Shown piece after piece: positions 36,741-62,539 of a stretch of 64,000 nt of DNA. The stretch spans positions 34,348,001-34,412,000 of the forward strand of contig NC_043005.1 in NCBI RefSeq assembly GCF_006345805.1, read 5' to 3'. This DNA is from Octopus sinensis. Lineage: Eukaryota. The position numbers were made by a program, and so were the translations under genes. Each line of letters opens with the position of its first letter. Position 1 is the first letter of the stretch. The notes under the pieces were generated by a model, which searched no databases, was not told the origin of the DNA, and was given only the letters and a program-made list of their open reading frames with translations.

Positions 36741-37065
36741 CTGGCCTCCATGCCGGTCGCACGTAAAAAGCACCATCCAATCGTGGCTGTTGCCAGCCTC
36801 ACCTGGCTTCCGTGCCGGTGGCACATAAAAAGCACCTTCCGATCGTGGCCGTTTGCCAGCCTTGTCTGGCACCTGTGCCGGTGGCACGTAAAAAGCTCCC
36901 CCTACACTCACGGAGTGGTTGGCGTTAGGAAGGGCATCCAGCCGTAGAAACATTGCTAGATCAGACTGGGCCTGGTGCAGCCTTCTGGCTTCCCAGACCC
37001 CAGTTGAACCGTCCAACCCATGCTAGCATGGAAAGCAGACGCTAAACGATGATGATGATGATGAT
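36741..37065 (+). mobile_element. RTE 3'-tail copy with three ~60-bp units and (GAT)n tail
   Basis: Collinear with 63020-63372. Confidence 0.9.
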
Positions 37066-39689: not shown

Positions 39690-40010
39690 ATCTCCATTTA
39701 ATATTTACTTTTCTATGCTTGCATGGAGCAGATGGAATTCAGTGAGACAGGTATTTTTTTATAGCTCAAAGCCTTTCTTGTCACCAACCCTCAATTGTTT
39801 CTATGTAAGGTAGTATTTTCTCTTGGCTGCTTGTTTGATGGTGACAGTTGTGCAATGTTAACACAAGGAAAGAGAGAGAGAGACACACACTCACACACAC
39901 ACACATGCACATACACAGATGAGGAGCATCTTTCAGTTTCAGTCTACCAAATCGGTTCATAAGGCTTTGGTCAGACTAGAAATATAGAAAACACTTACTT
40001 AAGGTACCAT
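39690..40010 (-). mobile_element. Composite CORE-like SINE, head truncated
   Basis: Parallels 5870-6245 (cttgtcaccaaccctca...; tttcagtttcagtctaccaaatc...aaggctttggtc). Confidence 0.65.
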
Positions 40011-40364
40011 CAAAAGAAAAATCCCTGCCACAGAGATTAAATGTTACCATTAATAAAACTTTTGACGACAATGCTATGATTTAAAAATTAAATATTGTCA
40101 GAGAGTTAGACTGCAGAAACTCTACCTTGCCCACTGTCCTATTCCTCCAACTTACATCAGTGTGGAGAGAGAGAAAGAGTCAGATAACAACTTTTCTGTA
40201 GTAAAACTCTTTGTTACAGAATTATTATCAAGCTCAAGTGACAATACCATCAACATTGCTTCTGGAGACTATATTATCAATTTGATTGAAATATCTTTTA
40301 ATAGTCAGGAAAATTTACATTTTCTTTCATTTTGGGATTTGGTTTGCAAGGTTCTTTATTTGAG

Positions 40365-40670
40365 TTTGTGCTTTGAAGCATATTTTGTTGTGTCTGGGGA
40401 GAGTCATTCTCTTTTAGTGCCTTATTATTTAACACACTCATTGGTAAAATTTCTTCTCATTTACTTATTTTTCCTAAAATTTTCATTGTGTTTTGCAACC
40501 TCTGCAATAGTCATTGACTCTGTCCAGCATCCGAGCTGCATTCTTTTTTTTTGTTTGTGTGCATGTGTGTGGGTTAGTGTGTGTGCATATGATTGTATGT
40601 ATGTATGTATGTATGTATGTATGTATGTGTATACGTTTGTAAGGTTGTGTATGCATGTATGTGTGTACAC
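40365..40670 (+). repeat. Solo copy of the outer arm of the 47.4-49.3 kb fold-back
   Basis: gtctggggagagtcattctcttttagtgccttattatttaacacactca... matches 47434 onward and the reverse complement of 49060-49245. Confidence 0.9.
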
Positions 40671-40782
40671 AACAATACATTTTCTTTAATTTTTGTAAAT
40701 TTTAAAAAGTTTTCTGTATAAGTATACATGTGTTTTAAATGGAATAAATGTTTTGAGGTTCATGAAAAACACCATTTGAGTG

Positions 40783-41000
40783 TGGCCATTGCCAGTACTG
40801 CCTGACTGGCCCTCATGCCAGTGACACATAAAGCACCCTCTACACACTCGGAGTGGTTGGCATTAGGAAGGGTATCCAGCTGTAGAAACTCTGCCAGATC
40901 AGCTTGGAGTCTCGTGTAGCCATCTGGCTCGCCAGTACTCAGTCGAACCATCCAACCCATTCCAGCCTCGAAAGTAGACGTTAAACGATGATGATGATGA
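40783..41000 (+). mobile_element. RTE 3'-tail copy
   Basis: cggagtggttggcattaggaagggtatccagctgtagaaac...aaacgatgatgatgatga. Confidence 0.85.
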
Positions 41001-41764
41001 GGATTGCTGCTTTCTAATGTTTGAAACCCTGAATTACTAAATAAGTGATTTAAAAAGGGAAAATAAAAAATATGAGGTCTCTTGTGAAATTCCTGGAAAT
41101 CTGCTTTTTTGTTTCTTTTTTTTTTGTTTCATACACTTGATTTCTCAGGAATAAGTTCTGGGAAACTGAGAAGCCCTAGTACATAGTACAGGGTTATGGC
41201 TGCATCATCATAATCATCATCACAACCTTGTACTAAAAGAAAAAATGGCTCCAATGAAGGAGAATTTTTTTTTAACTTTAGAATTTGTGAATTGTGGAAA
41301 GAAAATTTTTTAAAATTTACCTTTCTTTTGTATATGAACAGAAATTTTGACTCTTATAAAGAGTATCCATTTTTAATAGAAGTATTAATGCTACATAATA
41401 TTAGTTTAACACAAATAAACATTTGTGTATTGAATTAAAAGATTTATTTTGTATATTGTTTATATTATTAATTGTAATTTTGAATATTTTTATTAAAATT
41501 TTAGTTTGCTTTTCTTATTGAAAGATTAAGATGGGCTAAAAGCTAAATTTATGAAGAGCTATATTATGAAGTTGAATGTTTTATTTATTAATTTAAAGTT
41601 TTATGAGAGGAAGAAAGAAAGATAATATAAGCTCTATATTAACTGTATACTATTAAATGTTATCTAATCATCAAATAGATGAGGCTGCATCTCTCTCTTT
41701 CTCTCTCATGCACATACATACACATGTACACACATGAATGAATTTTGATGGGCAGATTGTTTCT

Positions 41765-42125
41765 TTTATCTTTTACTTGATTTATTAATTGGACTACAGC
41801 CATGTGTGTGTCATATCTTAAAGGGTTTAGTTGAACAAATCAACCACAGTACTTGTTTTTTATTAAGTCAGGCACTTATTCTCTGTGTCTTTTTTGTTAA
41901 ACTACTAAGTTACAGTGATGTAAACAAACAAGTTGCCAAGTGTTGAGGGGACAAACACACACACATCATGAGTTTCCATATAGTTTCCATCTCCCAAATT
42001 TACACACAAAGCAAAGTATTGGTCAGCCCTGAGCTATAGCAGACACTTGCCCAAGATGTCATTTAGTGGGATTTAACCCAAAATCATGTGGTTGCAAAGT
42101 GAGCTTCTTAACCACACAGCCATGC
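41765..42125 (-). mobile_element. Composite SINE: CORE-like head, (GT)n linker, Nin-like tail
   Basis: Head revcomp ggcatggctgtgtggttaagaagctc...; tail homologous to 8170-8290 and 59640-59715. Confidence 0.65.
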
Positions 42126-44199
42126 CTGCACTTATGTTTACATGTTCTTTGTTTTCTTTTTTAAAGTTAGTTTCATCGATTTATGGCTATATAAGTAAAT
42201 ATTAGCTCTATTTCAGTTTCATCTCAATGATTTTGTATGTCAAAAAAGATCTCATACCAGATCTTTATATAGGTTTCTCACAGCATTAAACCAGGGCCTA
42301 AATAAGCTATTGAGTATCATTTGATATTAAAGGAGAGACTTGGGCACCATATTTATCTTTCATTATTTACCAAAGCAATGTATATAGGTGTTTACTTATA
42401 TTCTAGTGCAATGAAAGGCTACAATTTGACTATTGAATTATCAAACATAAATTGTTTCATACTTGTTATTACTGATAATAATAAATAAAGGAGTTAAGTT
42501 TATGGAAATTGATTGATTGTCTTTTTATCCCTTCCTAAAAGATAGGCAATCAATAATCATGGCTTGTATTCTTTTGCAATCTATGGTACTTTCATTTTAT
42601 TGATTCACTCCTTAATTAAATCAGTCTCAGTATGGTAGAGCCATGTAGTTGAAGCTGGTAAACAATTTCCTTGAGAAACAAATAAGATATTATTTTAAAG
42701 GAAAATACTAACAAAAACTAATGAAGGTAAAATGTTGGATTAAAATCACCAGTTCAGTACACTGAGTATTTCCTTTTTATCAATGTATTTTATTTTCTTC
42801 TACATAAAAATTATAGCTTTGTGGTTAAGATGTTAATTTTGCTATCATGTGATGTGATTGGGCTTACTTGAACAAGTGTTTTTTTTTTTATTGTCCTGCA
42901 TGTGCCATATCCTTGCAAGTGCTGAAGCCCATGGGAGGTATATTGTGTGTGTGTGTATGTGTGTGTGTGTGTGTGTGTCTGAGTGAGTGTGTGTGTGCGT
43001 GTGTGTGTGCATGCATGCACATGCACACATTAACAGTTCATGGTACCACCAATAAAAGGATTGAGCAAAAACATCTTGTGATATTACCCCTTACCTTCAT
43101 GTTGTGTTCCTTTACACCTATAGCACCCTTGTCTTTCATTTCTTGGGGTTGATACCAGAAAAGTGGTAGATATAAATGCTAAAAGCCTTAAAAGTGCTAC
43201 AACTCCTGTAGTGAAATGATAAAATACTACTATTGTAAAAAGAGACAATAGTCATGTGCAGAAGATACTTTTAGACACTTAAAATCTGTTGCAGATTGAT
43301 TCTTTGTGTATCTAGACAAGGCTCTTCATTCTATATAACACAGTTGATATAACTTTAAAAAATAGGTAGTAAATCATCTAGGAGTGTTACATAGTCTAAC
43401 ATTTTATCCAGGAGACTTTCCTACTTTGTACTTGAATTTGGTGTAAAAAATTGGAGCCTCTTTTATACTTGATAGACATCTTACTATTCACTTTTAATGT
43501 AGCTACTTCATAGTATTAAAACAAACATAAATTCCAAAAATTTATATAAAATTTTCTAAATTTGCATTAATCATCCCACCTATGTTGGAGAACACAGATG
43601 TTACAAATGGAAATGTGTCAATAATCTTTTTCTAAGCTGCATCACCAACTTTTACTTGGGTTGGATACTAATTGGGTAATTCTTATATTTTAACTCTTAT
43701 TTTCTTATATATTACTGTTATTTATTTTATCAACCACAAAAAAAAAAAAAAAAGGAAAAGCAGAATTGACCTTGGCAGGATTTGAACTTAGAATCCTGGC
43801 AGGATTCAAACTCAGAAAGTATTTGGTTTGGTATTCTACAGTTTCTGCTCCATCTCACCACTATTTTTTTTGAAGATGAGAATAAACACTGCTTGTTAGC
43901 AGTGTTTATTCTCATGAATTTTGGCTTTAGTAGCCCATGCTCTTAACCACTATGCCATATGCCCATTCTTCGAAGAAAGGTGTGGTTATAATGACAATTA
44001 TGATGATGACAGTGATGATAGACAATAAAACAATGATACCTATAAGAATGCTTTAAATTGTTAATTATTATAATGAAAAACATGAGCATAAATTCTTTAA
44101 TATTCTTAAAATTTCTTTCCCTTGCTAATAAAAGCTGTTTTCTGTTTATTCTGTCATTAATAATTGTTACTGTATCCTCTGCTTATGTAATCTAACAAC

Positions 44200-44362
44200 T
44201 TCAGTTCTTATTTACATTATTTACAATTGATGGATATTTGTCCTCATCTTGTTTGTTGTTAACACGTTTCGACTGATATACCCTCCAGCCTTCATCAGGT
44301 TTGTTGGGGAAATTTCGAACCTGGGTTCTCATTCCAAAGGTTATTTTTTGATGTTGTTGTTA

Positions 44363-44410
<48 letters not shown>

Positions 44411-44494
44411 TCACTGCCTGAACGGGCATATGGCATAGTAGTTAAGAGCGTGGGCTACTAACCCCAAGATTCAGAGTTCGATTCCAGGCAGTGA

Positions 44495-44533
<39 letters not shown>

Positions 44534-44612
44534 CAACATCGAAAAATACCTTAGAACTTGAAATCTTGGGGTTAGTAGCCCATGCTCTTAACCACTATGC
44601 CATATACCCGTT
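44200..44612 (-). mobile_element. tRNA-head / (TAA)n / hammerhead SINE-like element with an internal inverted duplication
   Basis: Minus strand reads head (44612-44561), then caggcagtgacctg-(aat)n, then CTGATGA-A-GGCTG..CAGTC-GAAA; inverted head+(TAA)n copy at 44419-44556 with A box 44431 and B box 44476. Confidence 0.7.
44258..44305 (-). ncRNA. Degenerate minimal hammerhead ribozyme motif
   Basis: CTGATGA 44298-44292; stem II GGCTG/CAGTC with 10-nt loop; GAAA 44270-44267; ACGT palindrome; the NUH/stem I junction looks deleted in this copy. Confidence 0.6.
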
Positions 44613-45544
44613 CTTCCAAGAAAGGTGTGGTTATAATGACAATTATGATGATGACAGTGATGATAGGCAATAAAACACATTGTTTCTTGGAATCACTGCC
44701 TAAACAATCCTTCAAGGTTTTACTATTTCCAGTAGCTTCTGGAAGTCTCTATAAGGTTGCTTGATCTGAGAGCATTGTTTCAAAAATTGAATTGTATATT
44801 ATGTAATCATAGTTAAGTATTACTTGAGAAAATGAGAGGAAATGGTCATAACGTGAGTACTGTTGATCATAGGTTTACTGACCTAGGACTTACAAAAAAA
44901 AAACAACTTACATTCTCAACATTGCCTAAACTTGTATAAGGTGGCTTGGGATTTATTAGAATAAAGTATTTCAGTCCTCAACAGTTGACTATTTCCAGAG
45001 CCCAGAGTATTTCACTGTGAAACTTGTTTCTCTCTTTGGGGAAACTGCACTTCCTTTGATCACTGGCATCCTGATCGATAAACCAGATCAATAAACTGTT
45101 TTATATTGAAACTCTTCATCCTCTCTTTCATTGTGTTTCTGTTCTATTTCTGCCTCTTCTGCTGTTGCTGTAATGGACTTTGACCTTCACAACATTGCAA
45201 CCTCTACATAATCCACAAATAAGTTACCTGTTGTATACAACACTCTTCTCATCTATACCATACAAATTTTCCTTTGGTTCAAAACTGTTTTAATGGATCT
45301 CTTTCCTTCTTCACAGTTTGTACAGTAGACAAATCACCAAATCTTTCATCAAAACAATAACTGTCAAAATCTTACCTATATCTTCTAATTTGGCAACCCC
45401 ACCAACTGATTATGGTAATGTTCATCATTTGATGGGTTTGTTAAAAAAGATCCAAGACAGTATATATTAATCTTAATTCTGTTGTTTAGTTTTGTTTATA
45501 TATTTATATATACTCTTACAATACTGTAAGTTATTTAAAATAAA

Positions 45545-46030
45545 ATGGCTGTGTGGTTAAGAAGTTTGATTCTCAACCACATGATTTCAGGTTCAGTCCT
45601 GCATGATACCCTGTATAAATCTCTTCTGTTATAGGTCTGGGCTAACGAAAGTCTCCTAAGTAGATTTGGTCTTTGCTAACCAAAATCTTCTAAGTAGAAA
45701 CAGAAAAGAAACTTGTTATCTGCCCGTCCGTCCGTCTGTCTGTCTGTCCATCCATCTTTCTACTGATTGATGTATCTGTGTGTGTGTGTGTGTGCACATG
45801 TGTGTGTCTGTATTTGTTTTTATTTGCACTCGCTTATTTGTAAGATATGACATTTGAATAGTATTGCTGGCACTTCTGTCAATAACTTATTGGCTTGTTT
45901 CATACCTTAAAAACCATGTGGAATACGACCCCTTACTTGAAAAATAGATATGGGTTGGCTTCAGAAAGGTCATCCAGCTGTAAAAAATGTTTTTATAGGC
46001 TATTTTTCTAACCCATGCTAGCAATAAACA
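45545..46030 (+). mobile_element. Composite CORE-like SINE with (GT)n linker and RTE-like tail
   Basis: tggctgtgtggttaagaagttt...ggttcagtcc head; ggttggcttcagaaaggtcatccagctgtaaaa tail. Confidence 0.65.
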
Positions 46031-47433
46031 TAAGCAATAAAACCAAGTGAACTCATATGCCTATATAAGAAATATCATTGGGAGATAAAAAAAAATAGAG
46101 ATATATGCATGAAGATAACTAAAAGACAAAAAGACTCTTTCAAAAATCTCGTGTCACAATTTCAAAAATGTTTAATCAATTAATTTTGTTATCTAATAAT
46201 TAAGATGATAAACACAATCTATTGCTTATGGCAAATTTGATGCTATATTAGTACACTCATGATTGCTTTGTTGAATAATGGCACTTTTGTTTGATGACTG
46301 GTAAACTACTAATAAAATGATCATTTTTTTTATGCTGTTGAAAATGATGTAAACATATGCTTGTTATTTATTCAAGTATACATGAATTTGTGTAATATTA
46401 TATATCAGTGCAATATATTAAAACAGTAAAATTAAAATTAGAAAACTCTGGGTGGTACATGGTGAAAAGTTTTGGAACAGTAGTTTTGTTGTAGGCTGGA
46501 TTATCATTATCATCATCATCACGTCCATATTCCATGTTAGCAAGGATTAGATAGATTGACAAGATTTGATTGGTCGGAGGGCTGCATCATATTCCACTGT
46601 CTGCTTTGGCATGGTTTCTATGGCTGGATACTCTTTCTAGCATCAATCACTTTGCAATGCATACTGGGTGCTTTTTTTATGGCATCAATACCAGTGAGGT
46701 TGCCATACAGCATGCAAGAAAATTCCCTCTGAGTGAATGAGTCTACAGTAGAGAGGAAAGCAGTTTTATGCCTGGAGAAAAGGGGTTTATTAATGAGAGA
46801 AAGAACTGGAACAGGACAGGTTTCTTGCTGTAGAGAAGCAACATGTTACTCACATTATGGAAGAAAGGGTGGAGCAACAGGGCTAGAACTGAAGAAAAAT
46901 GAAATAGTGGTGATGAAGTGTCAGGATGGAGCTTCAAAGTACAAAATGAGAAGGAGTGGGTGCAGAAGAATTGAGAATATGTGGGGAAGTGGTTGTGTAT
47001 ATGAGAGAGAGAGAGAGAGAGAGAGAAATGGGCAAGGTAAGGATGAGTAGGTGACAACTGCAAAAACTGCGTAAGATTGAGGAGTTGATGTAGTGAATGG
47101 TGGATAAGGGATAGGAAGAAAAGAAAAATCATCTTTATGATTTTGATGCTCATAACCACAATGTCCACAGACAAGCAATATAAGTTACACTGTAAGCCAT
47201 GTTACAAATATGTCATATATATTGCACTACTTGCCCATAATAGAGTGGATAAGTGTCAAATTCCTGCATGGAAAGCAGGAAGGTTCGAAAGTCTAGGCCT
47301 AGCCCTAGTATATGTGCACACACATACGCACATATGCATACACACATGTATTACATTTACAAGGAAAAGGTTGGCAGTTAATTTGAAGTTCCACTTAGAT
47401 AGAAACAAAACCATTTAAAACATTATTTTATGA

Positions 47434-49257
47434 CTGGGGAGAGTCATTCTCTTTTAGTACCTTATTATTTAACACACTCACTGGTAAAGTTTCCACTCAT
47501 TTATTTATTTTTCCTAAAATTTTCATTTCATCTTGCAACCTTTTCAATAATCATTACCTCTGTCCGTTATCTGAGCTACATTCTTTTTGTTTGTTTGTGC
47601 ACGTGTGTGAGTCAGTGTATGTGCGCATACACATGTATGTATGTATTATGTATGCATGCATGTAAGTGTGTGTATGTATGTGTGTGTGTGTGTGCATATA
47701 TATGTATGTATGTGTGTACATTTGTATGTATGTATTCTGCATATTCATGTTTGTGTTTGTGTGTTTTTATGTGTATGTGTGTGTTTTCATGTGTGTGTAC
47801 CTCTGTCTCCTTGTGTGTGCATGTCTGTGTGTGTATAGATTTTTGTGACTATGTACTGTCTGTATGTATGGATGTGTATCTCCATATGTGTGGATGTGTG
47901 TCTCCGTATGTGCCCTTGTGTCAAGTGAAGTGAGTGTGTATATGGTCATGTGTTTCAGTCTTCATTTGCATTTGTGTGTGTAAATGTGCTTGTCTGTTCA
48001 TATTACCTATGTACCTATGTCTATCTGTTTACATTCATATCTATTTGTATACATACATGTGCATATACATACATGTACACACACACACATATATCTACAT
48101 AACAGCCCACTAACTATTCTACCTGTATATAAATATAAACTGCGGGTATGGGGGGTATGATCATGTACTACGTATATTTCCTATTTAGTACTGGGGAGGT
48201 TTCATTTATGAGGACGTACACATGTGCATATACAAAAAAGTAAACACACACACATCTACATGTGGATGTCAGGTTGACCCAGGTTGCCCCCATGTTGGCC
48301 CTTGGTATGTTGATAGAGAATGGAGAACTGTTTTTTGTCATCTTATTTTCTCAAATGTTCATGTAGTCTTTCTGCAATGCTCCTAGACTAAATGAACATT
48401 TAAGACAATATGACAACAAAAAATAGTCCTCCATACTCTATCAACATACCAAGGGCCAACATGGAGGGAACCTGGGTCAACTTGACATCCGCATTTTATC
48501 CAAGCACCCAAAGGACAAAAACCTCAGACAAATACAGGAGCACATCCTCATAAATGAAACATACCCTGTACTACATAGAAAATATACATAGTAGGTAATC
48601 ATACCTCCATACCCACAGTTTATATTTATATACAGGTAGAATAGTTAGTGGGCTGTTATGTAGATATGTGTGTGTTTACTTTTTTGTATATGCACATGTG
48701 TAGGCAAATGAATATGAATGTAATCAGATAGATATTCAGATGGATAGGTACATAGGTTAATATGAACAGACAAGCACACATACACACACACTTCACTTCA
48801 CACAAGGACACATATGGAGACACACATCTATACATATGGAGACACACATCCATACATACAGACACAGTACATTGTCACATACAAACACATACAAACACAC
48901 ACACACACAAACACACAAACACAATTGCATGAATATACAGAATACATACATACAAACACACACACATACATATTTACATATGCACACACATACATGCATA
49001 CACACACTTGCATACATACATACATACATGCGCATGCACACACACACTGACCCACACACACGTGCAAAAACAAACAAAAAGTACACAGCTCAGATAACAG
49101 ACAGAGTCAATGACTATTGAAAAGGTTGCAAGATGCAAGGAAAATTTGAGGAAAAATAAATAATTGAGAGGAAACTTTACCAGTGAGGCACTAAAAGAGA
49201 ATGACTCTCCCCAGACACAAAATATGCTTCAACACACGAACTCAATCCAAAAACGAA
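47434..49257. mobile_element. 1.8-kb fold-back (long inverted repeat) element
   Basis: Arms 47434-48369 and 48385-49214 are reverse complements around a 15-nt loop (ttctgcaatgctcct); 12-bp direct repeat attattttatga at 47422-47433 and 49258-49269. Confidence 0.9.
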
Positions 49258-49791
49258 ATTATTTTATGAGTTTTTTTTTAAACCACAAGGTGAACAATAC
49301 CCCCAAATTGTTCATCTCCCCAATTTAGGGAAGGTAATATGCGAAGGATACACTAAATCTTTGTGTTAATACTTTCTTTTCAGAGTATGAAGAAGCAAAG
49401 CTGGAAGTGAATTTACTAAAAATTTTGAAAAACAATCGTAACTTTAAATGACAAAAGACCAATAAATGCTACAGTATATCAAATCATTAATTCTGTTTGG
49501 TTTGAATATTTTCTTCACATTTCAGATTTAAGTAGTAGTTTTTTTATAATCAATTTAGTGTTAATTGACTTTTGATGAAAGGAGATATATTTATTTCAGA
49601 GGTGCACTGGCTAGACAAGTGATTTGATCTGAGACAGTGTGTTGAAACTAAAACAATTACACGATGAAAGACACATATTAACTATTCAAAAACACATAAA
49701 GACTTAATTTCACTTAAACATTTATTATTTATAGATTTAATATATTGTATTTTTAGTAAGTGATTAAAAATTATCTGTTTATATTTATCAG

Positions 49792-50028
49792 GATGACAGT
49801 GATGAAAGTAACTCCTTGTCTGGATCCCATATTGAAGTTAATACAGTCTCAGGAAACCTTATCCAACATCCTAAACCAAGTCCAAAAAACCTTAAAAAAA
49901 TCAAAGCAATTCAAGAATGGGAGATAATTAATGGATTGAAAGAGGGAGAGAAATGTGAAGAAAAACCAGAAAAATATCAGGGATATTTACTTAAAAAACG
50001 AAAATGGCCCCTAAAAGGTTGGCATAAG
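49792..50028 (+). CDS. OSBPL3/6/7: Internal coding exon of an oxysterol-binding protein-related gene (ORP3/6/7 subfamily), start of PH domain
   Basis: Acceptor tttatcag|GAT, donor AAG|gtaggt; 79 codons ending EWEIINGLKEGEKCEEKPEKYQGYLLKKRKWPLKGWHK. KKRKWPLKGWHK is the ORP3/6/7 PH signature. Neighbouring exons were not found in the window. Confidence 0.9.
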
Positions 50029-51556
50029 GTAGGTTAACTCTCTTTTATATCATTAGTTCTTTTGTTTGATTTATTTTCTTAAACCATTCTTTCTTACATT
50101 TGGTATGAAGCCAAATTGGAAAATATAAATCTGTTTTCTCAAAAATCAGCTTTGATGTAATAAAGGCCAGTAAGGTAGCCTTTATGCAGTCACTTAATCT
50201 GCTAGAAATAACAGTCAAATCACTCAAACTACACTGCTATGTTTAAAAGAGGCTGTGTAATTCTAGGTACACTATCAGAGTAAAATGGGTTAATCATGGT
50301 TAAAAGAGTTTTGATCATTTGTCTGTTCAATCAAGGATGACCTGAACCAAATAAAAAACAGCTTTGTGATATATATGAGAATGTTCTAATGAAAAAATAA
50401 TTAATGGATTTGTTTCTCAAAAACAACTTAGATAACATTAAGATTGTGCAGCCATAAATCTCACAATTATTTTAAAAGTAAAAAATTATGTTTGTCATAT
50501 ACAAAATAAATACTTTAAAAATGAAAGAATTAATTTTTTTTCTTATCTTTATCAAATCATTCTATGGTTATAATATTTTTTTAAATCATACAAACATCTA
50601 AAACTGTCATATTTACAGTTATTTGATCATCAGGAAATACACATTAATTTTGAGTGCAAACTGGATAAACAATATCTGACAGTGGTTATGTGTTAATGAG
50701 GTGAGAGAAAAATGTTGAAATAAAAAAAATAATTATATTTGTACTCTTAATGTAACACTGGTTCATAGTGTGAGTTTTTGGTAGCAATAATGTGAAGAGA
50801 ATTTCTCAAAACTGATTAAAGAATCTTTTTTTACTGATTTGTATTCATTGAAAATATTTTGACCAAATATGTATGGAATTAGCTGTAGAGTTAAATGATA
50901 CTAAGAAGAAGAAAAAGAAGAAAACATCTTTATAGGATATATGAAATAGTTACCTGCCATTTTTGAAGAATAACTTCAAACTTTCAACTGTTATTATATG
51001 TGGTATTGTGAGATTAACTCAGTCTCACTTGCACACTTTTAAATATCTTAATTTATCTATATTTCTGAGAGAATTTTTTTTTTTGTTATATGAATAAAAA
51101 TAAAATAACTTGTAGTTCACCAGTCATTATCATGTACTTTCTATTCTCTAGATTCCATGCCAATTTTCAATTACTGTGGCTTTTTTAACAATGAGTGGTA
51201 GCTTCTGATAGTTCATTCTAAAAATGAAGATGAACAATTACTTTTTTCCTTTATTGCACAAAAAGTTTTACTTTTGGTAAACTAAAAATGCAGTTTCAAT
51301 AAAAGAAAAAAAAATTCAAAACTTCAAGAAAACAAAAAGCAAAAACATTTTCAATAGAATATTAGGGGTTGCTTCTTCCAAAAGAGGACAGATGGATAAA
51401 AATCAGCAACTGATTATGTAATCAGAACAGGTATAATTTTAGGAAAATCAGAGCAAAAAACTTTGATTAACTGACATCCTTCTAGTTTGGAGTGGATATA
51501 GACCTTGAATGTTCTTCACTTATTTAGAAGGTAATCTGGTTGACTGAAGATATATA

Positions 51557-52650
51557 CAGGATGTCCTAAAATTAAGGCAACCAACTTTTTTCAATTTTGC
51601 CAAAGCAAAATATTGTTATATTTTGGGCCCCAGAATTGCAATTATGACACTACCACATTTTTTTCAATATGACCACCTCTGTTTCAAATCACATGTGGCA
51701 TGCAGCTGTTCTTGCAGAATCAAATCCAATTCCTAGTGCAGTTTTGCCTTCAGCGCATCAAATGAAGCATGAGGAGGGCTCAAGACACTTGTCTCCAAAA
51801 TGGACCAAACAGAAAAATCCAACAGGTTGATATTGGGGCTTCTTGAGGGCCATAACATCCTTGCCTATGAACAATGTAATGTTTTTCTGAATTCAGTGTT
51901 GTATCTGTTTGAAGCTGTGGGATGGTGCCAAGTCCTGTTGGAGGCTCCATGATGCACTTTGAAAGGGCTTATTCACCCGTGGAAGCAGTTCAGCTTCCAG
52001 AATGTCACTAATGTATTGTTGGGTATTAATTCTAATACATGAGGCACAAAAACGAGGGGAGACTTTCCAGTGTCTGTCACAGCTGCCTAAACCATAACTA
52101 ACTGTGTATTTTGACGTCAATTTATGAGTCTACCCTCAGTGGAGCCAGATACACTCCAAAGTTGGACATTCTGGTGGTTTACTGTCTGTTGAATGTCAGT
52201 TTTCTTTTCATCAATGAACACCAGGTTGGGCAGCATGCCCTCAGCCATCTGATACAGGATAAGAAGACTTCTCCAGTCTCATGGCCTTGTAAACTTCCGT
52301 GATCTCATGACGGTGAATCATCTTGTAGTGGTGGGTCCTGAGATCCACTTTTGACACTCTGTACATCGATGTTCAGCTTATTTTTGCTGTGGCAGCCAGT
52401 ATTCTGATGGAATGACAAGGATTTCACCATATCTTTTCTTTGGTACTTTTGATAAGCTGATGGGTCTGCACATTTCTTTTTCGGCCACGTCCTGTTTAAT
52501 CAGCAGTGGAGCCAGTCATTTGAAATTTCTGCAATTTTCCAGACTGTTGTTCAGTTAATTTTAAGCTTTTTTGTTAGAGCTGTATTACTTTTGCCTCCTT
52601 TGTGGAGGGCTATGATTGTATTTCAGTCTATAGCTGTTATCTAATTTTTA
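51557..52650 (-). mobile_element. maT-type (DD37D) transposon remnant
   Basis: TA-preceded end caggatgtcctaaaattaagg; minus strand IALHKGGKSN (HTH) and QQD-x37-D (..WPSRSPNINLLDFSVWSILE), with stop and frameshift. Confidence 0.85.
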
Positions 52651-52733
52651 AATCTGAATTAATTTAGTCTGAAACAAAAAGAAGACACACTAAGCTTTTA
52701 TAATAATGTATAATTTTTTATATCTTATTACAT

Positions 52734-53016
52734 CTGGGTCAAGAGGGTGGCTTCTGGAAGACTCCATGTCTGGCAACAGGATTCTGCATCATGCCACACT
52801 AATAGGAGAACCTAGTCATGATGGTCAGACAATTTCTGCAACCTCATCACTCCCCAAATTGTAACCACATAACTCCCCAGACTGCAACCCCCTTGATTAT
52901 TATATGTGCGGCACACTTGACCAACAAAACTACTTGTAGCACCAAAGATGAAGTGAAGGCAAGGATTATGGCAGCATTCACCAACTTAAACAAGGGGACT
53001 GTCCAGAAGAGTTGCA

Positions 53017-53017
<1 letters not shown>
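52734..53017 (+). mobile_element. Fragment of a second DD37D family (catalytic segment)
   Basis: WVKRVASGR..WQQDSASCHT...NSPDCNPLD...KDEVKARIMAAFTNLNK; inverted duplicate of 53243-53533. Confidence 0.85.
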
Positions 53018-53061
<44 letters not shown>

Positions 53062-53063
<2 letters not shown>

Positions 53064-53752
53064 AGTTGCAGTGAATAAACTGTCGTCTAAATTATGCAAA
53101 AATGAATGTAACACTGACATCTCATTTTAACAGATATATTTACCAAATTCACATAAAAATGTCTTGAAATACTAAAGAGTAAATTTATTCAACAAAATCA
53201 CCATTGGGTTCAACCACAGCCACCAGATGACTTCGGAATCTCCTGCAGTTCTTCTGGATGGTCTCCTTGTCAAAGTTGGTGAACGCTGCCATAATCCTTG
53301 CCTTCAGTTCATCTTTGGTGTTACAAGGAGCTTTGTTGGTCTCTCATTCAGCTGTACCTCACACATGACAATCAAGGGGGTTGCAGTCTGGGGAGTTAGG
53401 TGGTCAGATGTTAGAGGTGTTGTGGTTGCAAAAATTGTCTGACAGCTGTGATTGGGTTCTCCTGCTTGTGAGGCATGGTGCAGACTTCTATTGCCAGACA
53501 TAGGGTTTTCCAACAGACACCCTCTTGACTCAAGGCAGCACTGCCTTCTCCAGGCTCTTGATGTAGGCCTTTGTGTTGAGTCTGAGACTGTGTGGAAAGA
53601 CAAATAGAGGCATAACATCACCATCACTAGTGATCACTCCAAACACCATGATGTTGACTGGATGTTTGATTTTCATCACTCTCGGTACATGTTTGGGGAC
53701 ATGGCAAGCCTCAGATTGACACCCAAACACTCTGAAATGTTCATAGTGGAGC
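53062..53752 (-). mobile_element. Second DD37D family, 3' half with terminal repeat
   Basis: HPVNIMVFGVITSDGDVM...WPPNSPDCNPLD...VEPNGDFVE*; end caagttgcagtgaataaactgtcg next to (TA)n; truncated at a TA array. Confidence 0.85.
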
Positions 53753-53755
53753 TTA

Positions 53756-53803
<48 letters not shown>

Positions 53804-53876
53804 TATATACACACACATATATATATATACACACACATATATATATATATACACATATATATATACATATATATAT

Positions 53877-54333
53877 CATCATCATTTAGCATCCGTTTTC
53901 CATGCTAGCATGGGTTGGACGGTTCAACTGGGGTCTGTGAAGCCAGAAGGCTGCATCAGGCCCAGTCTGATCTGGCAGTGTTTCTGCGGCTGGATGCCCT
54001 TCCTAACGCCAACCACTCCGTGAGTGTAGTGGGTGCTTTTTACGTGCCACCAGCACAGGTGCCAGACGGAGCTGGTACACGGCCATGAACGGATGGTGCT
54101 TTTACATGCCTCATCATTTAGCGTCAGTTTCCCATGCAAGCATGAGTTGGACGGTTCAACTGGGGTCTGTGAAGCCAGAAGGCTGCATCAGGCCCAGTCT
54201 GATCTGGCAGTGTTTCTGCGGCTGGATGCCCTTCCTAACGCCAACCACTCCGTGAGTGTAGTGGGTGCTTTTTACGTGCCACCCGCACAGGTGCCAGACG
54301 GAGCTGGCACACGGCCACGAACGGATGGTGCTT
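53877..54333 (-). mobile_element. Tandem pair of RTE 3'-tail copies (~238-bp period)
   Basis: Two near-identical consecutive copies, both ending within the aaaagcacc unit, flanked by TA arrays. Confidence 0.92.
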
Positions 54334-54377
<44 letters not shown>

Positions 54378-54389
54378 CACACACACACA

Positions 54390-54469
<80 letters not shown>

Positions 54470-55216
54470 TATATATATGGTGAAAATAAATATGGTGAGA
54501 AAAGGGTTAAGAGAACAGTAGCTCTGAATATGGTCTGGTTCAACTGTGACTACTCTTCCAATCCGTGCCTTTGAAAGTGGATGTAAAATGATAACGATGA
54601 CAACAACAATGATGATGATGATGATGATGTAATTTTATTTTAACTATGCAGAAATTTTGCATGTAACATTTACATTTTAAAGAAATATTATTATTACTGC
54701 TCTTACCTCATATATACTCTCTGACCAACCAATCAATAAAATAACAAACTGTGGTCTATATATTAAAATTTCTAATCAATAAAGATGTTAAAAATAATTG
54801 TGGTGAAACACCCAAGCACACCACTTATTGTTGATATGGGAATCATTAAAAATAGTAATAAAAGAGTTGCACCAGACTTTAATTGTTTTTCAAAAATTGC
54901 TGGCAAGATTAAGAAAACCAAAGAGAGAAAAAAAAATGAAGTTTTATTCATTATACAGCAATGATATATTTGATAAATACTGTTTTTTGTATAAAAATAT
55001 CTCCATTGACTAATGATTTACAGAACTAAAACTTAAAATAGTTAATGCTGCAAACTATTTTGAATGGCCCTAATACTTATGTTTTACCTTGTATTTTTGT
55101 GCAAGACAACATTCTATTGATAGGCTCATACAGTTTAGCTCTTCCTTTATAAGACATATGGAAGTGGTATTGAAGTGCATATTACCAAAGCAGATAGAAT
55201 CTTTAGAAGGCTATAT

Positions 55217-56200
55217 ACAGTACTGTGCAAGATTCTTCAGGCACTTTAAACTATTGTAAATTTCTACTAAATACCAACATGTAAGTGGATGTTTTGCATT
55301 GCATTTTTTACAGATGAAACATTGGCTCTGTTGGAGTCATTTCCATACCTAATCATTATATTTTGTAGTAGAAGTTCTGAATAAGAGGGGATGATGCAGG
55401 ACAGAAACAAATGCACCTCACATAAACAAATCAAGATACAGTGTTTTAAAGTGTTTTAAAGCAGAAAAATGTTTATAATGGAAATTTATCACATAAATTC
55501 AGTTGCAGAAGGACAATTTGATATCAGACTTAGATGAAGGTGAGATTTTTCAGCATGATGGAGCTCCATGTCACAGATCACATGCAACACAACAGAATCT
55601 GGCTGACGAAGGTGTAACTGCATTGAAAGATTTGCCAGCTCAGAGCCCTGACTTGAATATCATTGAGAAAATGTGGACAGAACTAAAGAGGAGTTCGTCA
55701 GAAGAATCCACACAATTTTGAAGAGTTGTAGAAGCTTGGGTACAGACAAGAAGTTAGTGTACATTGTTAATACTTCATGTGGCTTCCTTTAGCTTGAATA
55801 ATTGCTTCATTGCACCTGGGAAGAGATGCATACAAATCCTTCACCAATTTCACAGGTATGAGATGCCGTTGTCTGTAGCCGAGCTTCCAAAACTCTTCAA
55901 GATTGTGCAGATTCTTCTGACAAACTCTTCTCTTTAGTTCTGTCTACATTTGTTTGGTGATATTCAAGTCAGGGCTCTAAACTGGCCAGTCTTTCAATAT
56001 GGTAACACCTTCATCAGCCAGACTGTTGTGTTGCATGCGATCTGTGGCATGGATCTCTGTCATGCTGAAAAATCTCACCTTTTGTACAGTAACTTCTTGA
56101 AATGAACATTGTGTAATAAATTTTCATTATAGACGTTTTTCTCTTTTAAAATACTGTATCTTGATGTGTTTATGTGAGGTGGTAGAAACTTTTGCACAGC
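55217..56200. mobile_element. Palindromic Tc1-type derivative with DD35E catalytic segment in both arms
   Basis: Ends cagtactgtgcaag / cttttgcacag; arms ~55414-55750 and ~55870-56180 inverted; QHD-x35-E (SPDLNIIE); minus arm continues to AIIQAKGSHMKY*. Confidence 0.8.
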
Positions 56201-56879
56201 TATTTTTTGTGGTCGTCTCACATTTTCCCCTCTCATTCAGAACCCCTACTACAAAATATAATGATTAGGTATGAAAATGACTCCAACAGGGCCAATGTTT
56301 CAATTAGTAGAAATTTACAATAGTTTAAAGTAGCCAAAGACTTTTGCATGGTACTGCACTTACAATCAGAACAATAACATTTCTACTGAATTCAAATCTA
56401 AGTTTGAACTCATTGAACATACCCCTCCTATAGAGAACTTCCAAAAATTGTTTTCTATGAAATGTTATATGACAGAGTGCAACAGATCTGTGATGAGTGA
56501 AGTGGAATGTATTGTTGAATATGTTGGATTTGTCATGTTAGCATCTGAGTGATACTGAACTTAAAGGAATTCGAAAAGTAAATGAGCAACAGAAGTGAGG
56601 TTGAGAACTAGCAGCTGTAGTTTTGACATATCAGTGAAATAGAATATATATAAGCTGCAGGAAAAGTGATGGACATTGACGGTGTGAGGGTCTCATGAAA
56701 AAGACAGATTTCAGTAAATTTAGGAAGTACATAAAATAGATATGGAAAACATTATTATGGAATAACAGATGTAAAATTAAAATTTATGAAAACATGCTTG
56801 AATCCTCCTGATTCCATCAGTGTGGGAATAATAAAGAGATTTTAAAAAATTGATTTTATATATATGCGTAAATATTTCA

Positions 56880-57600
56880 TCATTACCATTTAACATCTGT
56901 TTTCCATGCTGCATGGGCTGGACAGTTTGACGGGAGCCGGCAAGCTGGAGAGCTGCACCAGGCTCCAATTTCTACACATGAATGCCCTTCCTAATGCCAA
57001 CCGCTTAGAGTGTACTGGGTGCTTTTTATGTGGCACCATCACAAATGCTTGTTATATGACACCAGCGTAGATGCTTTTTATGTGGCACCAGCACAGGTGC
57101 TTTTTATGTGGCACCAGCACCTGTGGGGTCACCAAGTAGCTTGCAAGACAAAGACTTCTCAGCTGAGGGAAGGAGTGACTGTGTAGCAGGCAAAAGATTT
57201 GAGTGTGACAATGGATGAGAGATAGTTGTCTTACTAATGTGAGATACTTGGCTATCTCAGTTGGATTAGAAAAGCAGGGAAGGTTGGAAAGATTTGGAGA
57301 GAAAGATAGAGACTGAAGACCTATCCACAGGGAACAGTGAGGGGGAATGTATGTTGTAGGATGGAGGGGAGGAGGATGTTCCATAAGAGTGTGAGAAAAG
57401 ATGTTTAGAGATAGCAAGTGATGGTGAGAGGAATTGAAATAGCTGGGAAGTGGGGTATTGTAGATATGTAAGGGCATGGAGAGTGTGCAATAGGCATATG
57501 AGGGAGAGTGGAGGGGCTTGCAGCAGGTGGTGGAGTGACAGGAAGATAGGTTGTGAGAGAGTATATGTATGGGGGGCAGGGGGATGACCATAAGTGACAT
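56880..57600 (-). mobile_element. RTE-tail element with 25-bp motif repeats and a long pyrimidine-rich leader
   Basis: Tail core at 56880-57030; gtgctttttatgtggcacc x3-4; gtcttgcaagctacttggtga junction shared with 24040-24060. Confidence 0.6.
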
Positions 57601-57619
57601 GCCTGTATGTATGGATGGC

Positions 57620-58295
57620 CACAATTTTACTTACCTTGATGTATCTTCTCAAGTGCAGCGTATTGCCAGAAGTCTCAGTTCCTTGTCATCTCCACTGTAC
57701 ATCATTTCTTACCACTTTGTTCCACATGTATCTTCTCAAGTGCAGCAAATTGCCAGAAGTCTCAGTTCCTTGTCATCTCCTCTGAAGATCATTTCTCACC
57801 ACTTTGTCCCACATTTTCCTTGGGCTGTCCCTTCCATAGGTTCTCTCCAAAATTAGAGATTGGCATATCTTTATGTAACTGTCCTCATCCATATGCATCA
57901 CATGACCATACTAGTGCAGTCTTCTCTTTTGCATATTATATTTGATGCCTTTTATACCCAATATTTCTCTTATATCATTTACACTCTGACATTACCCATT
58001 CAGTGGAACATGCTGGTTTCATTTCTTTCAAACCTTCACTTGTTCTCTGTAGTCACAGCTGTGTTTCACTGCCATGTAGCATAGTTGTTCATATACAGAC
58101 ATCATACAATCTGCCTTTCACTCTGAGGGAGAGGCCCTTTGTTACCAACAAAGATAGTAGTTCTCTGAACTTTGCCTGGCCCATTCTTATTCTAGCAGCT
58201 ATACTTTCACTGCTAACTTGGGTGTCTAGGTAACGGAAGCTATTTACCTCCACTGCCAACTTGGTCACCCAGGTAATGGAAACTATCTACTTCTA
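57620..58295 (-). pseudogene. Degraded RTE C-terminal fragment
   Basis: Minus strand parallels FRYLGDQV..ARIRI..AKFREL..LVTKGLSLRVKGRLYD..MLHGSETWAVT of the 60618 ORF. Confidence 0.85.
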
Positions 58296-59299
58296 AGAAT
58301 ACCCCCAGACATTTGAGAAAATCTATTTCATGTACATTCTTAGTGTTTATTGTGCCTACCACCAACAAATTTTCTACATACCAAGCAGAGCCATCTCCCT
58401 AAAGAGATTAGTGATTTGTCTGTTTTCCTACTTACTAGGATAGCAATTTGCATATTCTTGTTTGAATCTGTTGGAATGTATTAAGAATAAATGTATTTCT
58501 CTTTGTTTTGATTCTCACTTTCTGTATGCACATGGTAATTTATTAGAGTTAAATGTTTCCTCTTAAAATAATTATTCAAGTGGAAACATCACTTGACTTA
58601 GATTAACAAACTGAAGATTCTTGAGAATATGGGATGCAAATCAACTGAGAAAGTGACTGGAGTTGAAAGGCTTTAAGAAATATGTGCTGAAAATTCAGCT
58701 GTATTAATATAGAGAATATGTAATGCAAATGACATTAGCTAAATATGGGTATGTGCTGATTTTGGAAAGTAGTTTCAGAAAGATGAAGGAAAACATGGAT
58801 ACTGGCCCTCACAAGCCTAATGAAATGGTAATATATCATATTAAAAACATAGTCAACATATACTGGCAGAGAAAACACAATGGTGATAAATTTTAATATC
58901 AGATTTTGTGAAGGCTAGGCTGAATGTTAAACTTATTATCATAAACTTATGTTTATAACATTTTTGAATCTAAAGTTGAATTAGCTCATTTCAAAATTTT
59001 TAGATATTGGCAGGTTTAAAATTTTTTTGTGTGTTGAATGATAGGCCATAAAATTCCCTGCATGTAGTACTTTAAGAAGAATTTCTGATAGATATGGTAG
59101 CTCATTGTGACATTAGTTCTTTGATAGTGAAAGCAAGTATTTAAAGGATATCTGTTGTATATAAATACAATTAATATTTTAGTTTTCTTTTACTGATTAT
59201 TGCATATTAAAAATTTTTGCAAAGTAAACAATTCTTCAACTGGCATGTTTTGAATTTGCCAATAATAAAAATAATAATTTTTTATATAAATATGTGGAC

Positions 59300-59460: not shown

Positions 59461-59491
59461 GTGTGTGTGTGTGTGTGTGTGCATGCATGTG

Positions 59492-59522
<31 letters not shown>

Positions 59523-62483: not shown

Positions 62484-62539
62484 GAACAATCAAAATCAAA
62501 TCATATATCAGAAAGCAGGGGTTAAGTGACCCATCTGTT

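What the first reader, a model, noticed from the sequence alone, without database searches (positions are those of the whole stretch)
47422..49269. 1.8-kb fold-back palindrome with a 15-nt loop, ending ~530 bp before the ORP exon
Seen: ~830-940-bp inverted arms mixing unique blocks and GT/TATG repeats, no ORF, a 12-bp flanking direct repeat, and a third arm copy at 40365-40670 that also matches the extra ~40 bp present only on the right arm. Established: Foldback-type elements belong to the MULE superfamily with ~9-11-bp TSDs, and coleoids have very high ADAR activity. Inference: an unannotated foldback family. If this region is intron, the pre-mRNA would form a very long dsRNA next to a splice acceptor.
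Basis: partly seen in the sequence, partly recalled or inferred. Interest (0 to 1): 0.7.

Follow-up and report, generated by a model that had tools for sequence, protein, structure and literature searches.

The report
Decayed inverted-repeat mobile-element insertion
The 1.8-kb palindrome is real, but it looks like an old, dead mobile-element insertion built from two inverted copies of one non-coding repeat (a retroelement-style structure), not a Foldback/MULE DNA transposon, and such structures are ordinary in a repeat-rich animal genome.

Summary
The left arm is 47424-48369 (946 nt), the spacer 48370-48384 (15 nt) and the right arm 48385-49224 (840 nt). Substitution identity is about 89-90% in every unique block. 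That uniformity points to one old duplication event and argues against an assembly artefact.

The Foldback/MULE reading is not supported:
- The arms have no Pfam domain and no protein relatives.
- The two ends just inside the 12-bp repeat are different sequences.
- 12 bp lies outside the 8-10 bp reported for Mutator/Foldback elements.
- The solo copy (40334-40675) has its own 17/18-bp flanking repeat, which is a retroposon signature.

The three copies share one end and differ in how far they extend at the other. The right arm carries 33 nt (49225-49257) that the left arm lacks. The left copy of the 12-mer also resembles the repeat at exactly that truncation point.

My best reading (about 0.45) is a single retrotransposition event. 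It produced a head-to-head inverted dimer by snap-back or twin priming, flanked by a 12-bp target duplication. This architecture is documented for Penelope-like elements. Membership is unproven: there is no RT/GIY-YIG ORF and no hammerhead ribozyme.

The rivals are a local DNA-level inverted duplication (0.25) and a foldback DNA transposon (0.1).

If transcribed, the region folds into a long imperfect hairpin 535 nt upstream of the ORP exon acceptor. Intron status is likely but unproven.

The parts
47422..47433 (.). Left copy of the 12-mer ATTATTTTATGA. I read it as the target-site duplication. It also resembles the repeat's own sequence (TATTTTGTGT) at the point where the left arm is cut short.
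   Evidence: Sequence read. Null frequency about 0.008. It matches the repeat at 8 of the 10 bases next to CTGGGG (alignments); the binomial estimate of about 0.002 is my own calculation.
47434..48369 (-). Left arm, an inverted copy of the unit (antisense under the preferred orientation). It lacks the outer 33 nt that the right arm has.
47601..47972 (.). Microsatellite-rich block of the left arm (GT, ATGT, 20-22-nt units). It carries most of the length difference between the arms.
48217..48261 (.). A 45-nt patch in the left arm. It is 44/45 the reverse complement of right-arm 48658-48702 and replaces the partner of 48495-48540. I read it as a later repair event templated from the other arm.
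   Evidence: (I15, D2).
48370..48384 (.). The 15-nt spacer at the centre of symmetry (TTCTGCAATGCTCCT). GCA/TGC are symmetric around A48377.
   Evidence: sequence.
48385..49224 (+). Right arm, the paired part. Its order is inner unique block 48385-48790, microsatellite block 48791-49063, then outer unique block 49064-49224.
49225..49257 (+). A 33-nt extension of the unit present on the right arm only. It is shared with the solo copy and is comparable to the one-sided 'tail' of Penelope-like insertions.
   Evidence: literature.
49258..49269 (.). Right copy of the 12-mer ATTATTTTATGA.
40334..40675 (-). Solo copy of the unit (about 225-nt unique end plus an ATGT/GT microsatellite). It is 83% identical to either arm. 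Under the preferred orientation it is a 5'-truncated copy with AATAAA 21 nt before its 3' end.
40316..40333 (.). Flanking direct repeat of the solo copy, TACATTTTCTTTCATTTT. It matches 40676-40693 at 17 of 18 positions.
   Evidence: Null about 0.003 for non-periodic 18-mers with at most one mismatch.
40676..40693 (.). Second copy of the solo unit's flanking repeat, TACATTTTCTTTAATTTT.
49792..50028 (+). ORP (OSBP-related protein) exon encoding the start of the PH domain (...YQGYLLKKRKWPLKGWHK). The acceptor is ttatcag|GATGAC and the donor AAG|gtaggt. It has no ATG and is the only ORP exon in the window.
   Evidence: The acceptor is conserved in Logan contigs.

Best explanation
The segment 47434-49257 is one old insertion of a non-coding retroposed repeat. 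It went in as a head-to-head inverted dimer, flanked by a 12-bp target-site duplication (ATTATTTTATGA).

In the orientation I prefer, the unit reads 5'-inner block, then microsatellite, then a roughly 225-nt unique 3' end. It is sense on the + strand in the right arm.

The proposed steps are all inferred:
1. Reverse transcription was primed at the right-hand nick and copied the RNA from its 3' end (49257) leftwards.
2. The cDNA was then copied back in inverted orientation. This happened either by snap-back self-priming at its 3' end, which leaves the 15-nt spacer, or by a second priming event.
3. The other target end, ...ATTATTTTATGA-3', annealed to a partly complementary site 33 nt inside the inverted copy and was extended.

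This leaves the left arm 33 nt shorter. It also leaves the target's own 12-mer sitting where the repeat's TATTTTGTGT would be.

The solo copy at 40334-40675 is an ordinary 5'-truncated insertion of the same family with an 18-bp duplication.

The architecture consists of an adjacent inverted truncated copy, a 30-40-bp extension at only one end, a palindromic junction, association with microsatellites, and non-autonomous derivatives. It is the one described for Penelope-like retroelements. L1 twin priming is the LINE analogue.

The copy is now dead, with arms about 10% diverged. Its only likely activity is passive. If it lies in the ORP primary transcript, it folds into a long imperfect hairpin, the generic kind of substrate for ADAR hyper-editing. 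This last step is inference and was not tested.
For: Shown:
- The arms are uniformly 88-90% identical by substitution in all unique blocks, so they come from one event.
- The 12-mer is exact on both sides, with null frequency about 0.008.
- The left 12-mer also matches the repeat's own sequence at 8 of the 10 bases next to CTGGGG. A model in which the target end primed at an internal microhomology predicts both facts. It also predicts that the left junction keeps the target's bases rather than the repeat's.
- The right arm and the solo copy share the 30-33 nt that the left arm lacks.
- The three copies share one end and differ at the other. The solo copy stops inside the microsatellite while the arms run on for 650 nt or more. 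That is the pattern of 5' truncation.
- The solo copy has a 17/18 flanking repeat. In element sense it begins AAAA, and AATAAA lies 21 nt before the 3' end (read).
- The arms have no coding capacity.

Literature:
- Penelope-like insertions often carry an adjacent inverted 5'-truncated copy and a 30-40-bp tail at only one end. They show a microsatellite bias and have non-autonomous derivatives. Remnants are present in Octopus species (PMC8557442).
- They also show palindromes at the inverted junction, interpreted as self-priming; a 31-bp tail; an inverted copy 37 bp shorter than its partner; and 8-10-bp TSDs (PMC3846280).
Against: - Only three copies of the outer block are available, and there is no copy of the inner block outside the palindrome. 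The orientation of the unit and the claim that the inner block belongs to the unit are therefore inferences.
- No RT or GIY-YIG sequence and no hammerhead ribozyme is present. No tRNA, 5S or 7SL head was found. The class of the mobilising element is unknown.
- There is no poly(A) or clear simple-repeat tail at the proposed 3' end, and the 3' ends of the right arm and the solo copy differ by about 17 nt.
- The 12-mer is AT-rich and low in complexity, and its 3'-terminal A mismatches the proposed template.
- No empty site or second genomic copy could be retrieved.
Confidence: 0.45

Rival explanations
1. Local DNA-level inverted duplication. A SINE-like retroposon (unique head plus microsatellite tail, like the solo copy) inserted once, giving the right arm. 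Later, about 0.85 kb comprising that copy and its neighbouring unique DNA was duplicated in inverted orientation. The mechanism would be fold-back repair or replication template switching, with the outer junction formed at a CAT/TATTTT microhomology.
For: - The inner block occurs nowhere else in the 64 kb.
- The solo copy ends exactly at its microsatellite with its own flanking repeat, so a 340-nt unit may be complete.
- The arms are closer to each other (87.5%) than to the solo copy (83%). Site patterns are L=R 17, L=T 9, R=T 12.
- The left arm's homology to the repeat really does extend through 47424-47433.
- The centre is almost spacer-free, as in fold-back events.
- A later inter-arm templated patch shows that the arms interact.
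- Two other inverted TE-fragment pairs lie within 9 kb.
Against: - It gives no reason for the exact 12-mer direct repeat at the two outer borders, which has a null of about 0.008. A further templated switch would have to be added.
- No target duplication for the right-arm 'SINE' is visible at the end of its microsatellite (read).
- A 17-18-bp and a 12-bp flanking repeat around two structures of the same family is more economical as two insertions.
Confidence: 0.25
2. A non-autonomous Foldback-type (Mutator/MULE-related or other long-TIR) DNA transposon. It would be mobilised in trans by a transposase encoded elsewhere, with the 12-mer as its target duplication. The left end would have lost about 33-45 nt after insertion.
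For: - The arms are long composite inverted repeats with internal simple repeats and almost no middle domain, and they are flanked by a direct repeat.
- Foldback-like elements have variable composite TIRs (PMC3169594).
- The window holds a clear foldback derivative of a Tc1/mariner element at 55218-56356, so such derivatives do arise in this genome.
Against: - The termini inside the 12-mers are not inverted copies of each other, and the symmetric ends have no TSD.
- 12 bp is outside the 8-10 bp of Mutator/Foldback elements.
- The similarity of the left 12-mer to the repeat would have to be chance (about 0.002, my estimate).
- The solo arm has its own 17/18-bp flanking repeat.
- There is no family-specific subterminal tandem unit, only microsatellite.
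- There is no transposase in the window related to it.
Confidence: 0.1
3. Assembly artefact, for example a chimeric fold-back long read or a mis-join of two repeat copies.
For: Palindromes with tiny loops are a known product of missed hairpin adapters (my knowledge). No independent reads could be examined.
Against: - The arms differ by 79 substitutions (42 transitions, 37 transversions) and 28 indel events, mostly in microsatellites. An artefactual fold-back would give near-identical arms after polishing.
- The spacer has no adapter-like sequence.
- The left arm holds a 45-nt patch and a 16-nt segment that the right arm lacks.
Confidence: 0.03

Closest known systems
Penelope-like element (PLE) insertions, including Naiad/Neptune/Poseidon types and their non-autonomous derivatives
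   Same: - An inverted, shorter copy lies directly adjacent, so the whole insert is an inverted repeat.
- An extension of 30-40 bp is present at one end only (33 nt here).
- The junction is palindromic, which the literature attributes to self-priming.
- A short target duplication flanks the insert.
- The insert is associated with microsatellites.
- PLE remnants are reported in Octopus species.
   Different: - There is no RT/GIY-YIG ORF, no direct pseudo-LTR and no hammerhead ribozyme.
- Here the two inverted copies make up the whole insert, with nothing between them.
- The TSD is 12 bp against 8-10 bp in the rotifer examples.
- Family membership is therefore untested beyond architecture.
L1 twin priming
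   Same: A single insertion flanked by one TSD contains an inverted segment, because the second target end primes internally on the template through microhomology.
   Different: Twin priming normally inverts a different part of the element, with only a small overlap. Here nearly the whole insert is duplicated, which fits snap-back copying better.
Foldback / Mutator-Foldback DNA transposons (Drosophila FB, Tm1 of Meloidogyne, Galileo-like long-TIR elements)
   Same: The arms are long and variable-length inverted, contain internal repeats and have little or no middle domain. There is no coding capacity in most copies. The arms of a single element diverge (about 93% identical in Tm1).
   Different: - The defining terminal motifs and the 8-10-bp TSD are absent.
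- The ends are asymmetric.
- The internal repeats are generic microsatellite.
- A solo arm carries an 18-bp flanking repeat.
Intronic inverted repeat pairs (such as inverted Alu pairs) as ADAR substrates
   Same: Two inverted copies of a repeat within one transcript give a long imperfect intramolecular duplex. Across metazoans, including octopus, A-to-I editing mainly targets such dsRNA from repeats (PMC9989829).
   Different: Here the pair arose in one event with a 15-nt spacer, rather than from two independent insertions. The arms are 10% diverged, so this is not a 'young' pair. Editing was not examined.

Membership tests
Foldback / Mutator-Foldback (MULE-related) DNA transposon | The two termini immediately inside the target duplication are inverted copies of each other (conserved terminal motifs). 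| tested here: not met
   Inside the 12-mers the left end reads CTGGGGAGAGTC.... The reverse complement of the right end reads TTCGTTTTTGGATTGAG.... The right end has 33 nt that the left lacks.
Foldback / Mutator-Foldback (MULE-related) DNA transposon | Target-site duplication of 8-10 bp, mostly 9. | tested here: not met
   The flanking repeat is 12 bp. At the symmetric ends (47424/49224) there is none. The 8-10-bp range comes from PMC3169594.
Foldback / Mutator-Foldback (MULE-related) DNA transposon | Composite TIRs built largely from tandem copies of a family-specific subterminal unit. | tested here: inconclusive
   The arms hold GT/ATGT microsatellite and two copies of a 22-nt unit, but no array of a specific 10-31-nt unit.
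Foldback / Mutator-Foldback (MULE-related) DNA transposon | Some family members encode a Mutator-like (or P-like) transposase between the arms, and many paired-arm copies exist in the genome. | not testable with these tools
   No genome of the organism is searchable here. In the window the only other copy is a solo arm. There is no such transposase in the arms.
Penelope-like element insertion | An adjacent inverted, shorter copy forms an inverted repeat, joined at the 5' ends. | tested here: met
   Two inverted copies are joined at a 15-nt spacer, and the left is shorter at its outer end. Calling the joined ends '5' ends' rests on the inferred orientation.
Penelope-like element insertion | A 30-40-bp 'tail' extension present at only one end of the insert. 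| tested here: met
   Positions 49225-49257 (33 nt) are present only on the right arm and are shared with the solo copy. The feature is described.
Penelope-like element insertion | RT plus GIY-YIG endonuclease ORF, or 3'-end similarity to an autonomous PLE for non-autonomous members. | tested here: not met
   There is no Pfam domain in the three + frames of 47400-49290 and no homologues of arm ORFs. Similarity to an autonomous partner cannot be tested without a genome or repeat library.
Penelope-like element insertion | Hammerhead ribozyme motif in the pseudo-LTR (canonical clades; absent in Naiad/Chlamys). | tested here: not met
   Rfam at E<=1 over 40000-50200, and at E<=10 over 49040-49290 and 40300-40580, gave no hammerhead.
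Non-LTR retroposon (SINE, or 5'-truncated LINE-dependent element) | Variable-length target duplications of roughly 7-20 bp. | tested here: met
   17/18 bp around the solo copy and 12 bp around the palindrome.
Non-LTR retroposon (SINE, or 5'-truncated LINE-dependent element) | Copies share the 3' end and are truncated to different extents at the 5' end. | tested here: inconclusive
   Three copies share the unique end and differ at the other. That is too few copies, and the opposite orientation (a complete 340-nt SINE) is also possible.
Non-LTR retroposon (SINE, or 5'-truncated LINE-dependent element) | A pol III head derived from tRNA, 5S or 7SL (for a SINE). | tested here: not met
   ARAGORN found no tRNA-like sequence in the window. 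Rfam gave no tRNA, 5S or 7SL match in the units.

The most novel reading that the evidence does not exclude
The unit belongs to an undescribed, ribozyme-less, non-autonomous retroelement family of this lineage that habitually integrates as snap-back head-to-head dimers. Such a family would seed kilobase-scale intronic hairpins next to exons. It would then be a systematic source of long dsRNA substrates for editing, or for small-RNA production, in neural genes such as this ORP.
Probability: 0.12. Interest if true: 0.5.

Novelty: new member of a known kind. Interest (0 to 1): 0.25.

Why it matters
The finding matters mainly as annotation. This 1.8-kb block should be masked as a decayed repeat-derived inverted dimer, not read as regulatory or coding sequence, and it should not be filed under Foldback/MULE.

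If the retro-type reading is right, it gives a clean example outside model organisms of a single insertion event creating a long hairpin. The junction is still legible: the target duplication, the microhomology at the truncated arm and the one-sided 33-nt extension can all still be read.

Its position 535 nt upstream of a conserved ORP exon makes it a convenient test case for two questions. One is whether old, 10%-diverged intronic hairpins are still hyper-edited. The other is whether they affect use of the neighbouring acceptor.

Inverted TE-derived pairs are frequent here, with three in 9 kb of this window. By itself the structure is therefore not surprising.

Tried and rejected
Searches that found nothing:
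1. Protein searches with the open frames of the outer block and of the inner block, meant to fish out other copies among spurious ORFs of public assemblies. The results were 0 scoring hits from 1 candidate, and no candidates.
2. Exact-pattern scans of the metagenome and viral contig collections with the best conserved 22-29-mers of the outer and inner blocks. All returned 0 hits.
3. Exact look-ups of ORFs crossing the spacer, the right junction and the left arm. None is on record.
4. Rfam. It returned only sub-threshold 'long hairpin' (MIR2630) and TG-microsatellite (mir-297/466-like) matches, which are generic. There was no tRNA or hammerhead.
5. Looking for further ORP exons to prove intron status. 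Only one exon is in the window.

Orthologous loci that gave no information:
- Logan contigs of a close relative (L001-L005, 87-91% identical) stop in a homopolymer run at about 49283-49305, just short of the junction.
- Contigs of more distant relatives (L006-L010) align only in the exon.

Models considered and rejected:
- TPRT or twin priming with the unit oriented 'unique head, microsatellite tail'. Any priming on RNA 3' ends puts the tails next to the flanks, whereas here the microsatellites face the centre. That orientation therefore cannot give this structure in one retro event.
- Two independent insertions in opposite orientation. This cannot explain the shared 400-nt inner block or the single centre of symmetry.
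- An ATG-containing mini-exon at 49388-49408. It is not conserved in the close relative, which has a stop and no donor.
Full report
**Observation**

The repeat finder, a self-BLAST and a global alignment agree on the structure. Window 47424-48369 and 48385-49224 are reverse complements of each other around a 15-nt spacer at 48370-48384.

Each arm has three parts:
- an outer unique block of about 175 nt;
- a block of 270-370 nt made of GT, ATGT and 20-22-nt units;
- an inner unique block of about 400 nt.

Counting substitutions only, the arms are 89.4%, 90.3% and 88.2% identical in the three unique blocks. Almost all of the length difference (946 against 840 nt) lies in the microsatellite block and one 16-nt deletion.

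This uniform divergence has two consequences. The whole arm was duplicated in a single event, and the event is old. It also argues against an assembly fold-back, which would give near-identical arms. Here there are 79 substitutions (42 transitions, 37 transversions), private indels, and a private 45-nt patch.

**The third copy and the ends**

A profile built from the outer block finds exactly three copies in the 64 kb: the two arms and 40351-40559. A profile of the inner block finds only the two arms, plus some microsatellite noise.

The solo copy runs from 40334 to 40675. It consists of the outer block and about 110 nt of ATGT/GT repeat. It is bracketed by TACATTTTCTTTCATTTT and TACATTTTCTTTAATTTT, which match at 17 of 18 positions. 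Among random sites of the window with the same geometry, about 0.3% show such a non-periodic match, and most of those lie in one tandem array. A flanking repeat of that length is the mark of endonuclease and reverse-transcriptase insertion, not of a cut-and-paste transposase (my knowledge).

The right arm's homology to the solo copy continues outward to 49254-49257. That is 30-33 nt beyond the point where the left arm stops.

**The 12-mer**

ATTATTTTATGA is exact at 47422-47433 and 49258-49269. An exact match of at least 12 nt in this geometry occurs at about 0.8% of random sites.

The two copies are not placed equivalently. The right copy starts directly after the end of the repeat, at 49257. 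The left copy lies where the repeat's own bases would be. TATTTTATGA aligns with TATTTTGTGT of the right arm and of the solo copy, matching at 8 of 10 positions directly next to the invariant CTGGGGAGAG. I estimate that at about 0.002 by chance in this AT-rich DNA.

Each simple reading explains one of these facts and leaves the other to chance:
- A foldback DNA transposon explains the duplication but not the resemblance or the unequal ends.
- A local inverted duplication explains the resemblance but not the duplication.

**Preferred model**

Both facts follow if the insert 47434-49257 was made in one reverse-transcription event, with the shared outer block as the 3' end of the template.

The proposed steps are:
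1. First-strand synthesis started at the right-hand nick and ran towards the centre.
2. The cDNA was copied back on itself, by snap-back or by a second priming. This automatically gives one centre of symmetry and a short spacer.
3. The other target end, whose last 12 bases are the future duplication, annealed at a partly complementary site 33 nt inside the inverted copy and was extended.

The primer's own bases are kept in this process. That is why the left junction is 12/12 identical to the right-hand duplication but only 8/10 identical to the repeat.

With this orientation the solo copy is an ordinary 5'-truncated copy. Its duplication begins AAAA in element sense, and AATAAA lies 21 nt before its end (read).

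I first tried the opposite orientation, with a unique head and a microsatellite tail. It cannot give this structure in one retro event, because priming on RNA 3' ends places the tails next to the flanks.

**Comparison with known systems**

The literature describes this architecture for Penelope-like elements:
- Insertions are highly 5'-truncated.
- An inverted truncated copy is often directly adjacent.
- A 30-40-bp tail is often present at only one end.
- Microsatellites are preferred targets.
- Non-autonomous derivatives exist, and remnants occur in Octopus species (PMC8557442).

In a rotifer study, the inverted copy was 37 bp shorter than its partners and the tail was 31 bp. Target duplications were 8-10 bp, and palindromes at the inverted junction were attributed to self-priming (PMC3846280).

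This resemblance is architectural only. The arms have no Pfam domain and no protein relatives. They have no hammerhead ribozyme and no tRNA-like head. I therefore say it works like a Penelope-type or twin-primed insertion, but I do not file it as a member.

Foldback/Mutator membership fails two tested criteria, terminal identity and an 8-10-bp duplication (PMC3169594).

**Rival still standing**

A DNA-level inverted duplication of a segment containing a complete 340-nt SINE-like copy remains possible. The points in its favour are:
- The inner block is unique in the window.
- The arms are closer to each other (87.5%) than to the solo copy (83%).
- The 45-nt patch at 48217-48261 is 44/45 the reverse complement of right-arm 48658-48702. 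This shows that the arms have served as templates for each other after the palindrome formed.

I give this rival 0.25, against 0.45 for the retro model and 0.1 for a foldback DNA transposon. With three copies of the outer block and no genome to search, the question cannot be settled here.

**Gene context**

The open frame at 49792-50028 begins at an acceptor (ttatcag|GATGAC), ends at a donor (AAG|gtaggt) and has no ATG. It encodes ...EWEIINGLKEGEKCEEKPEKYQGYLLKKRKWPLKGWHK.

A library-wide HMMER search returned 235 relatives. They include full-length proteins with the OSBP signature EQVSHHPP. One is P0010, a 926-aa protein of Nucella lapillus. In these proteins the homologous stretch starts a few residues after the initiator methionine, so the exon is probably the second coding exon.

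No other ORP exon lies in the window. The acceptor and the exon are conserved in Logan contigs of related species.

An upstream exon must therefore exist, and the palindrome, which ends 535 nt before the acceptor, most likely lies in that intron. I could not locate the upstream exon, so this remains an inference.

**RNA folding**

Folded as RNA, 47424-49224 gives -1060 kcal/mol against -395 +/- 12 for shuffles. There are 713 base pairs across the centre, and the longest uninterrupted helix is 51 bp.

That is the generic kind of substrate that A-to-I editing targets across animals (PMC9989829). Whether this one is edited, or affects splicing, was not testable.

**Assessment**

The structure is real and derives from a mobile element, and its junctions still show how it was probably made. 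It is nevertheless a dead, non-coding repeat in a window full of repeats. The window holds a LINE reverse-transcriptase ORF, Tc1/mariner fragments and two further inverted TE-fragment pairs within 9 kb. I rate it as a new member of a known kind, with modest interest.

Noticed in passing
window 55218-56356: A second palindrome of about 1.14 kb, with arms 55218-55749 and 55869-56356 (about 77% identical, spacer about 120 nt). Its outer ends read CAGTAC..., like Tc1/mariner terminal repeats. Both arms carry the C-terminal half of a DDE_3 transposase reading towards the centre. It looks like a fold-back derivative of a Tc1/mariner element.
   Followed up: partly
window 52735-53017 and 53243-53532: A third inverted pair (79% identical, 226-nt spacer) of a transposase-like C-terminal fragment. 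The left copy is cut off by an (AT)n run, and the right copy is part of a longer minus-strand element reaching about 53900.
   Followed up: partly
window 48217-48261: A 45-nt patch in the left arm is 44/45 the reverse complement of a right-arm segment 400 nt away (48658-48702), not of its positional partner. This looks like a later inter-arm templated repair or template switch within the palindrome.
   Followed up: yes
window 60579-62480 (+), 57986-58209: An uninterrupted 634-aa open frame with a reverse-transcriptase domain (RVT_1, E 3e-32) followed by a weak PHD-like cysteine motif, i.e. a LINE. A 225-nt fragment of the same element lies inverted 3.7 kb upstream (78% identical).
   Followed up: partly
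window 62531-63198; also 36740-37065, 53875-54338, 63049-63370: A tandem array with a period of about 61 nt lies directly after the LINE ORF. It is joined to a dispersed repeat of about 230-330 nt that recurs in both orientations at three other places in the window (83-96% identical).
   Followed up: no
L001-L005 (Logan, SRR118693xx) against window 49283-50209: Contigs from a related species are 87-91% identical through the intron and 100% identical in the 73-aa frame of the exon. All break in a C/A/T homopolymer run that corresponds to window 49283-49305, some 15-35 nt beyond the right 12-mer. They neither show nor exclude the palindrome in that species.
   Followed up: yes
window 49375-49410: The sequence ...ctttcttttcag|AGTATGAAGAAGCAAAGCTGGAAG|gtgaat looks like a mini-exon with an ATG. 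In the related species it reads ATGAAAAAGTAA and has no donor, so it is probably not coding.
   Followed up: partly
window 50029-64000: No further ORP exon lies in the 14 kb downstream of the PH-domain exon, so the next intron is longer than 14 kb and is filled with transposable-element fragments.
   Followed up: yes
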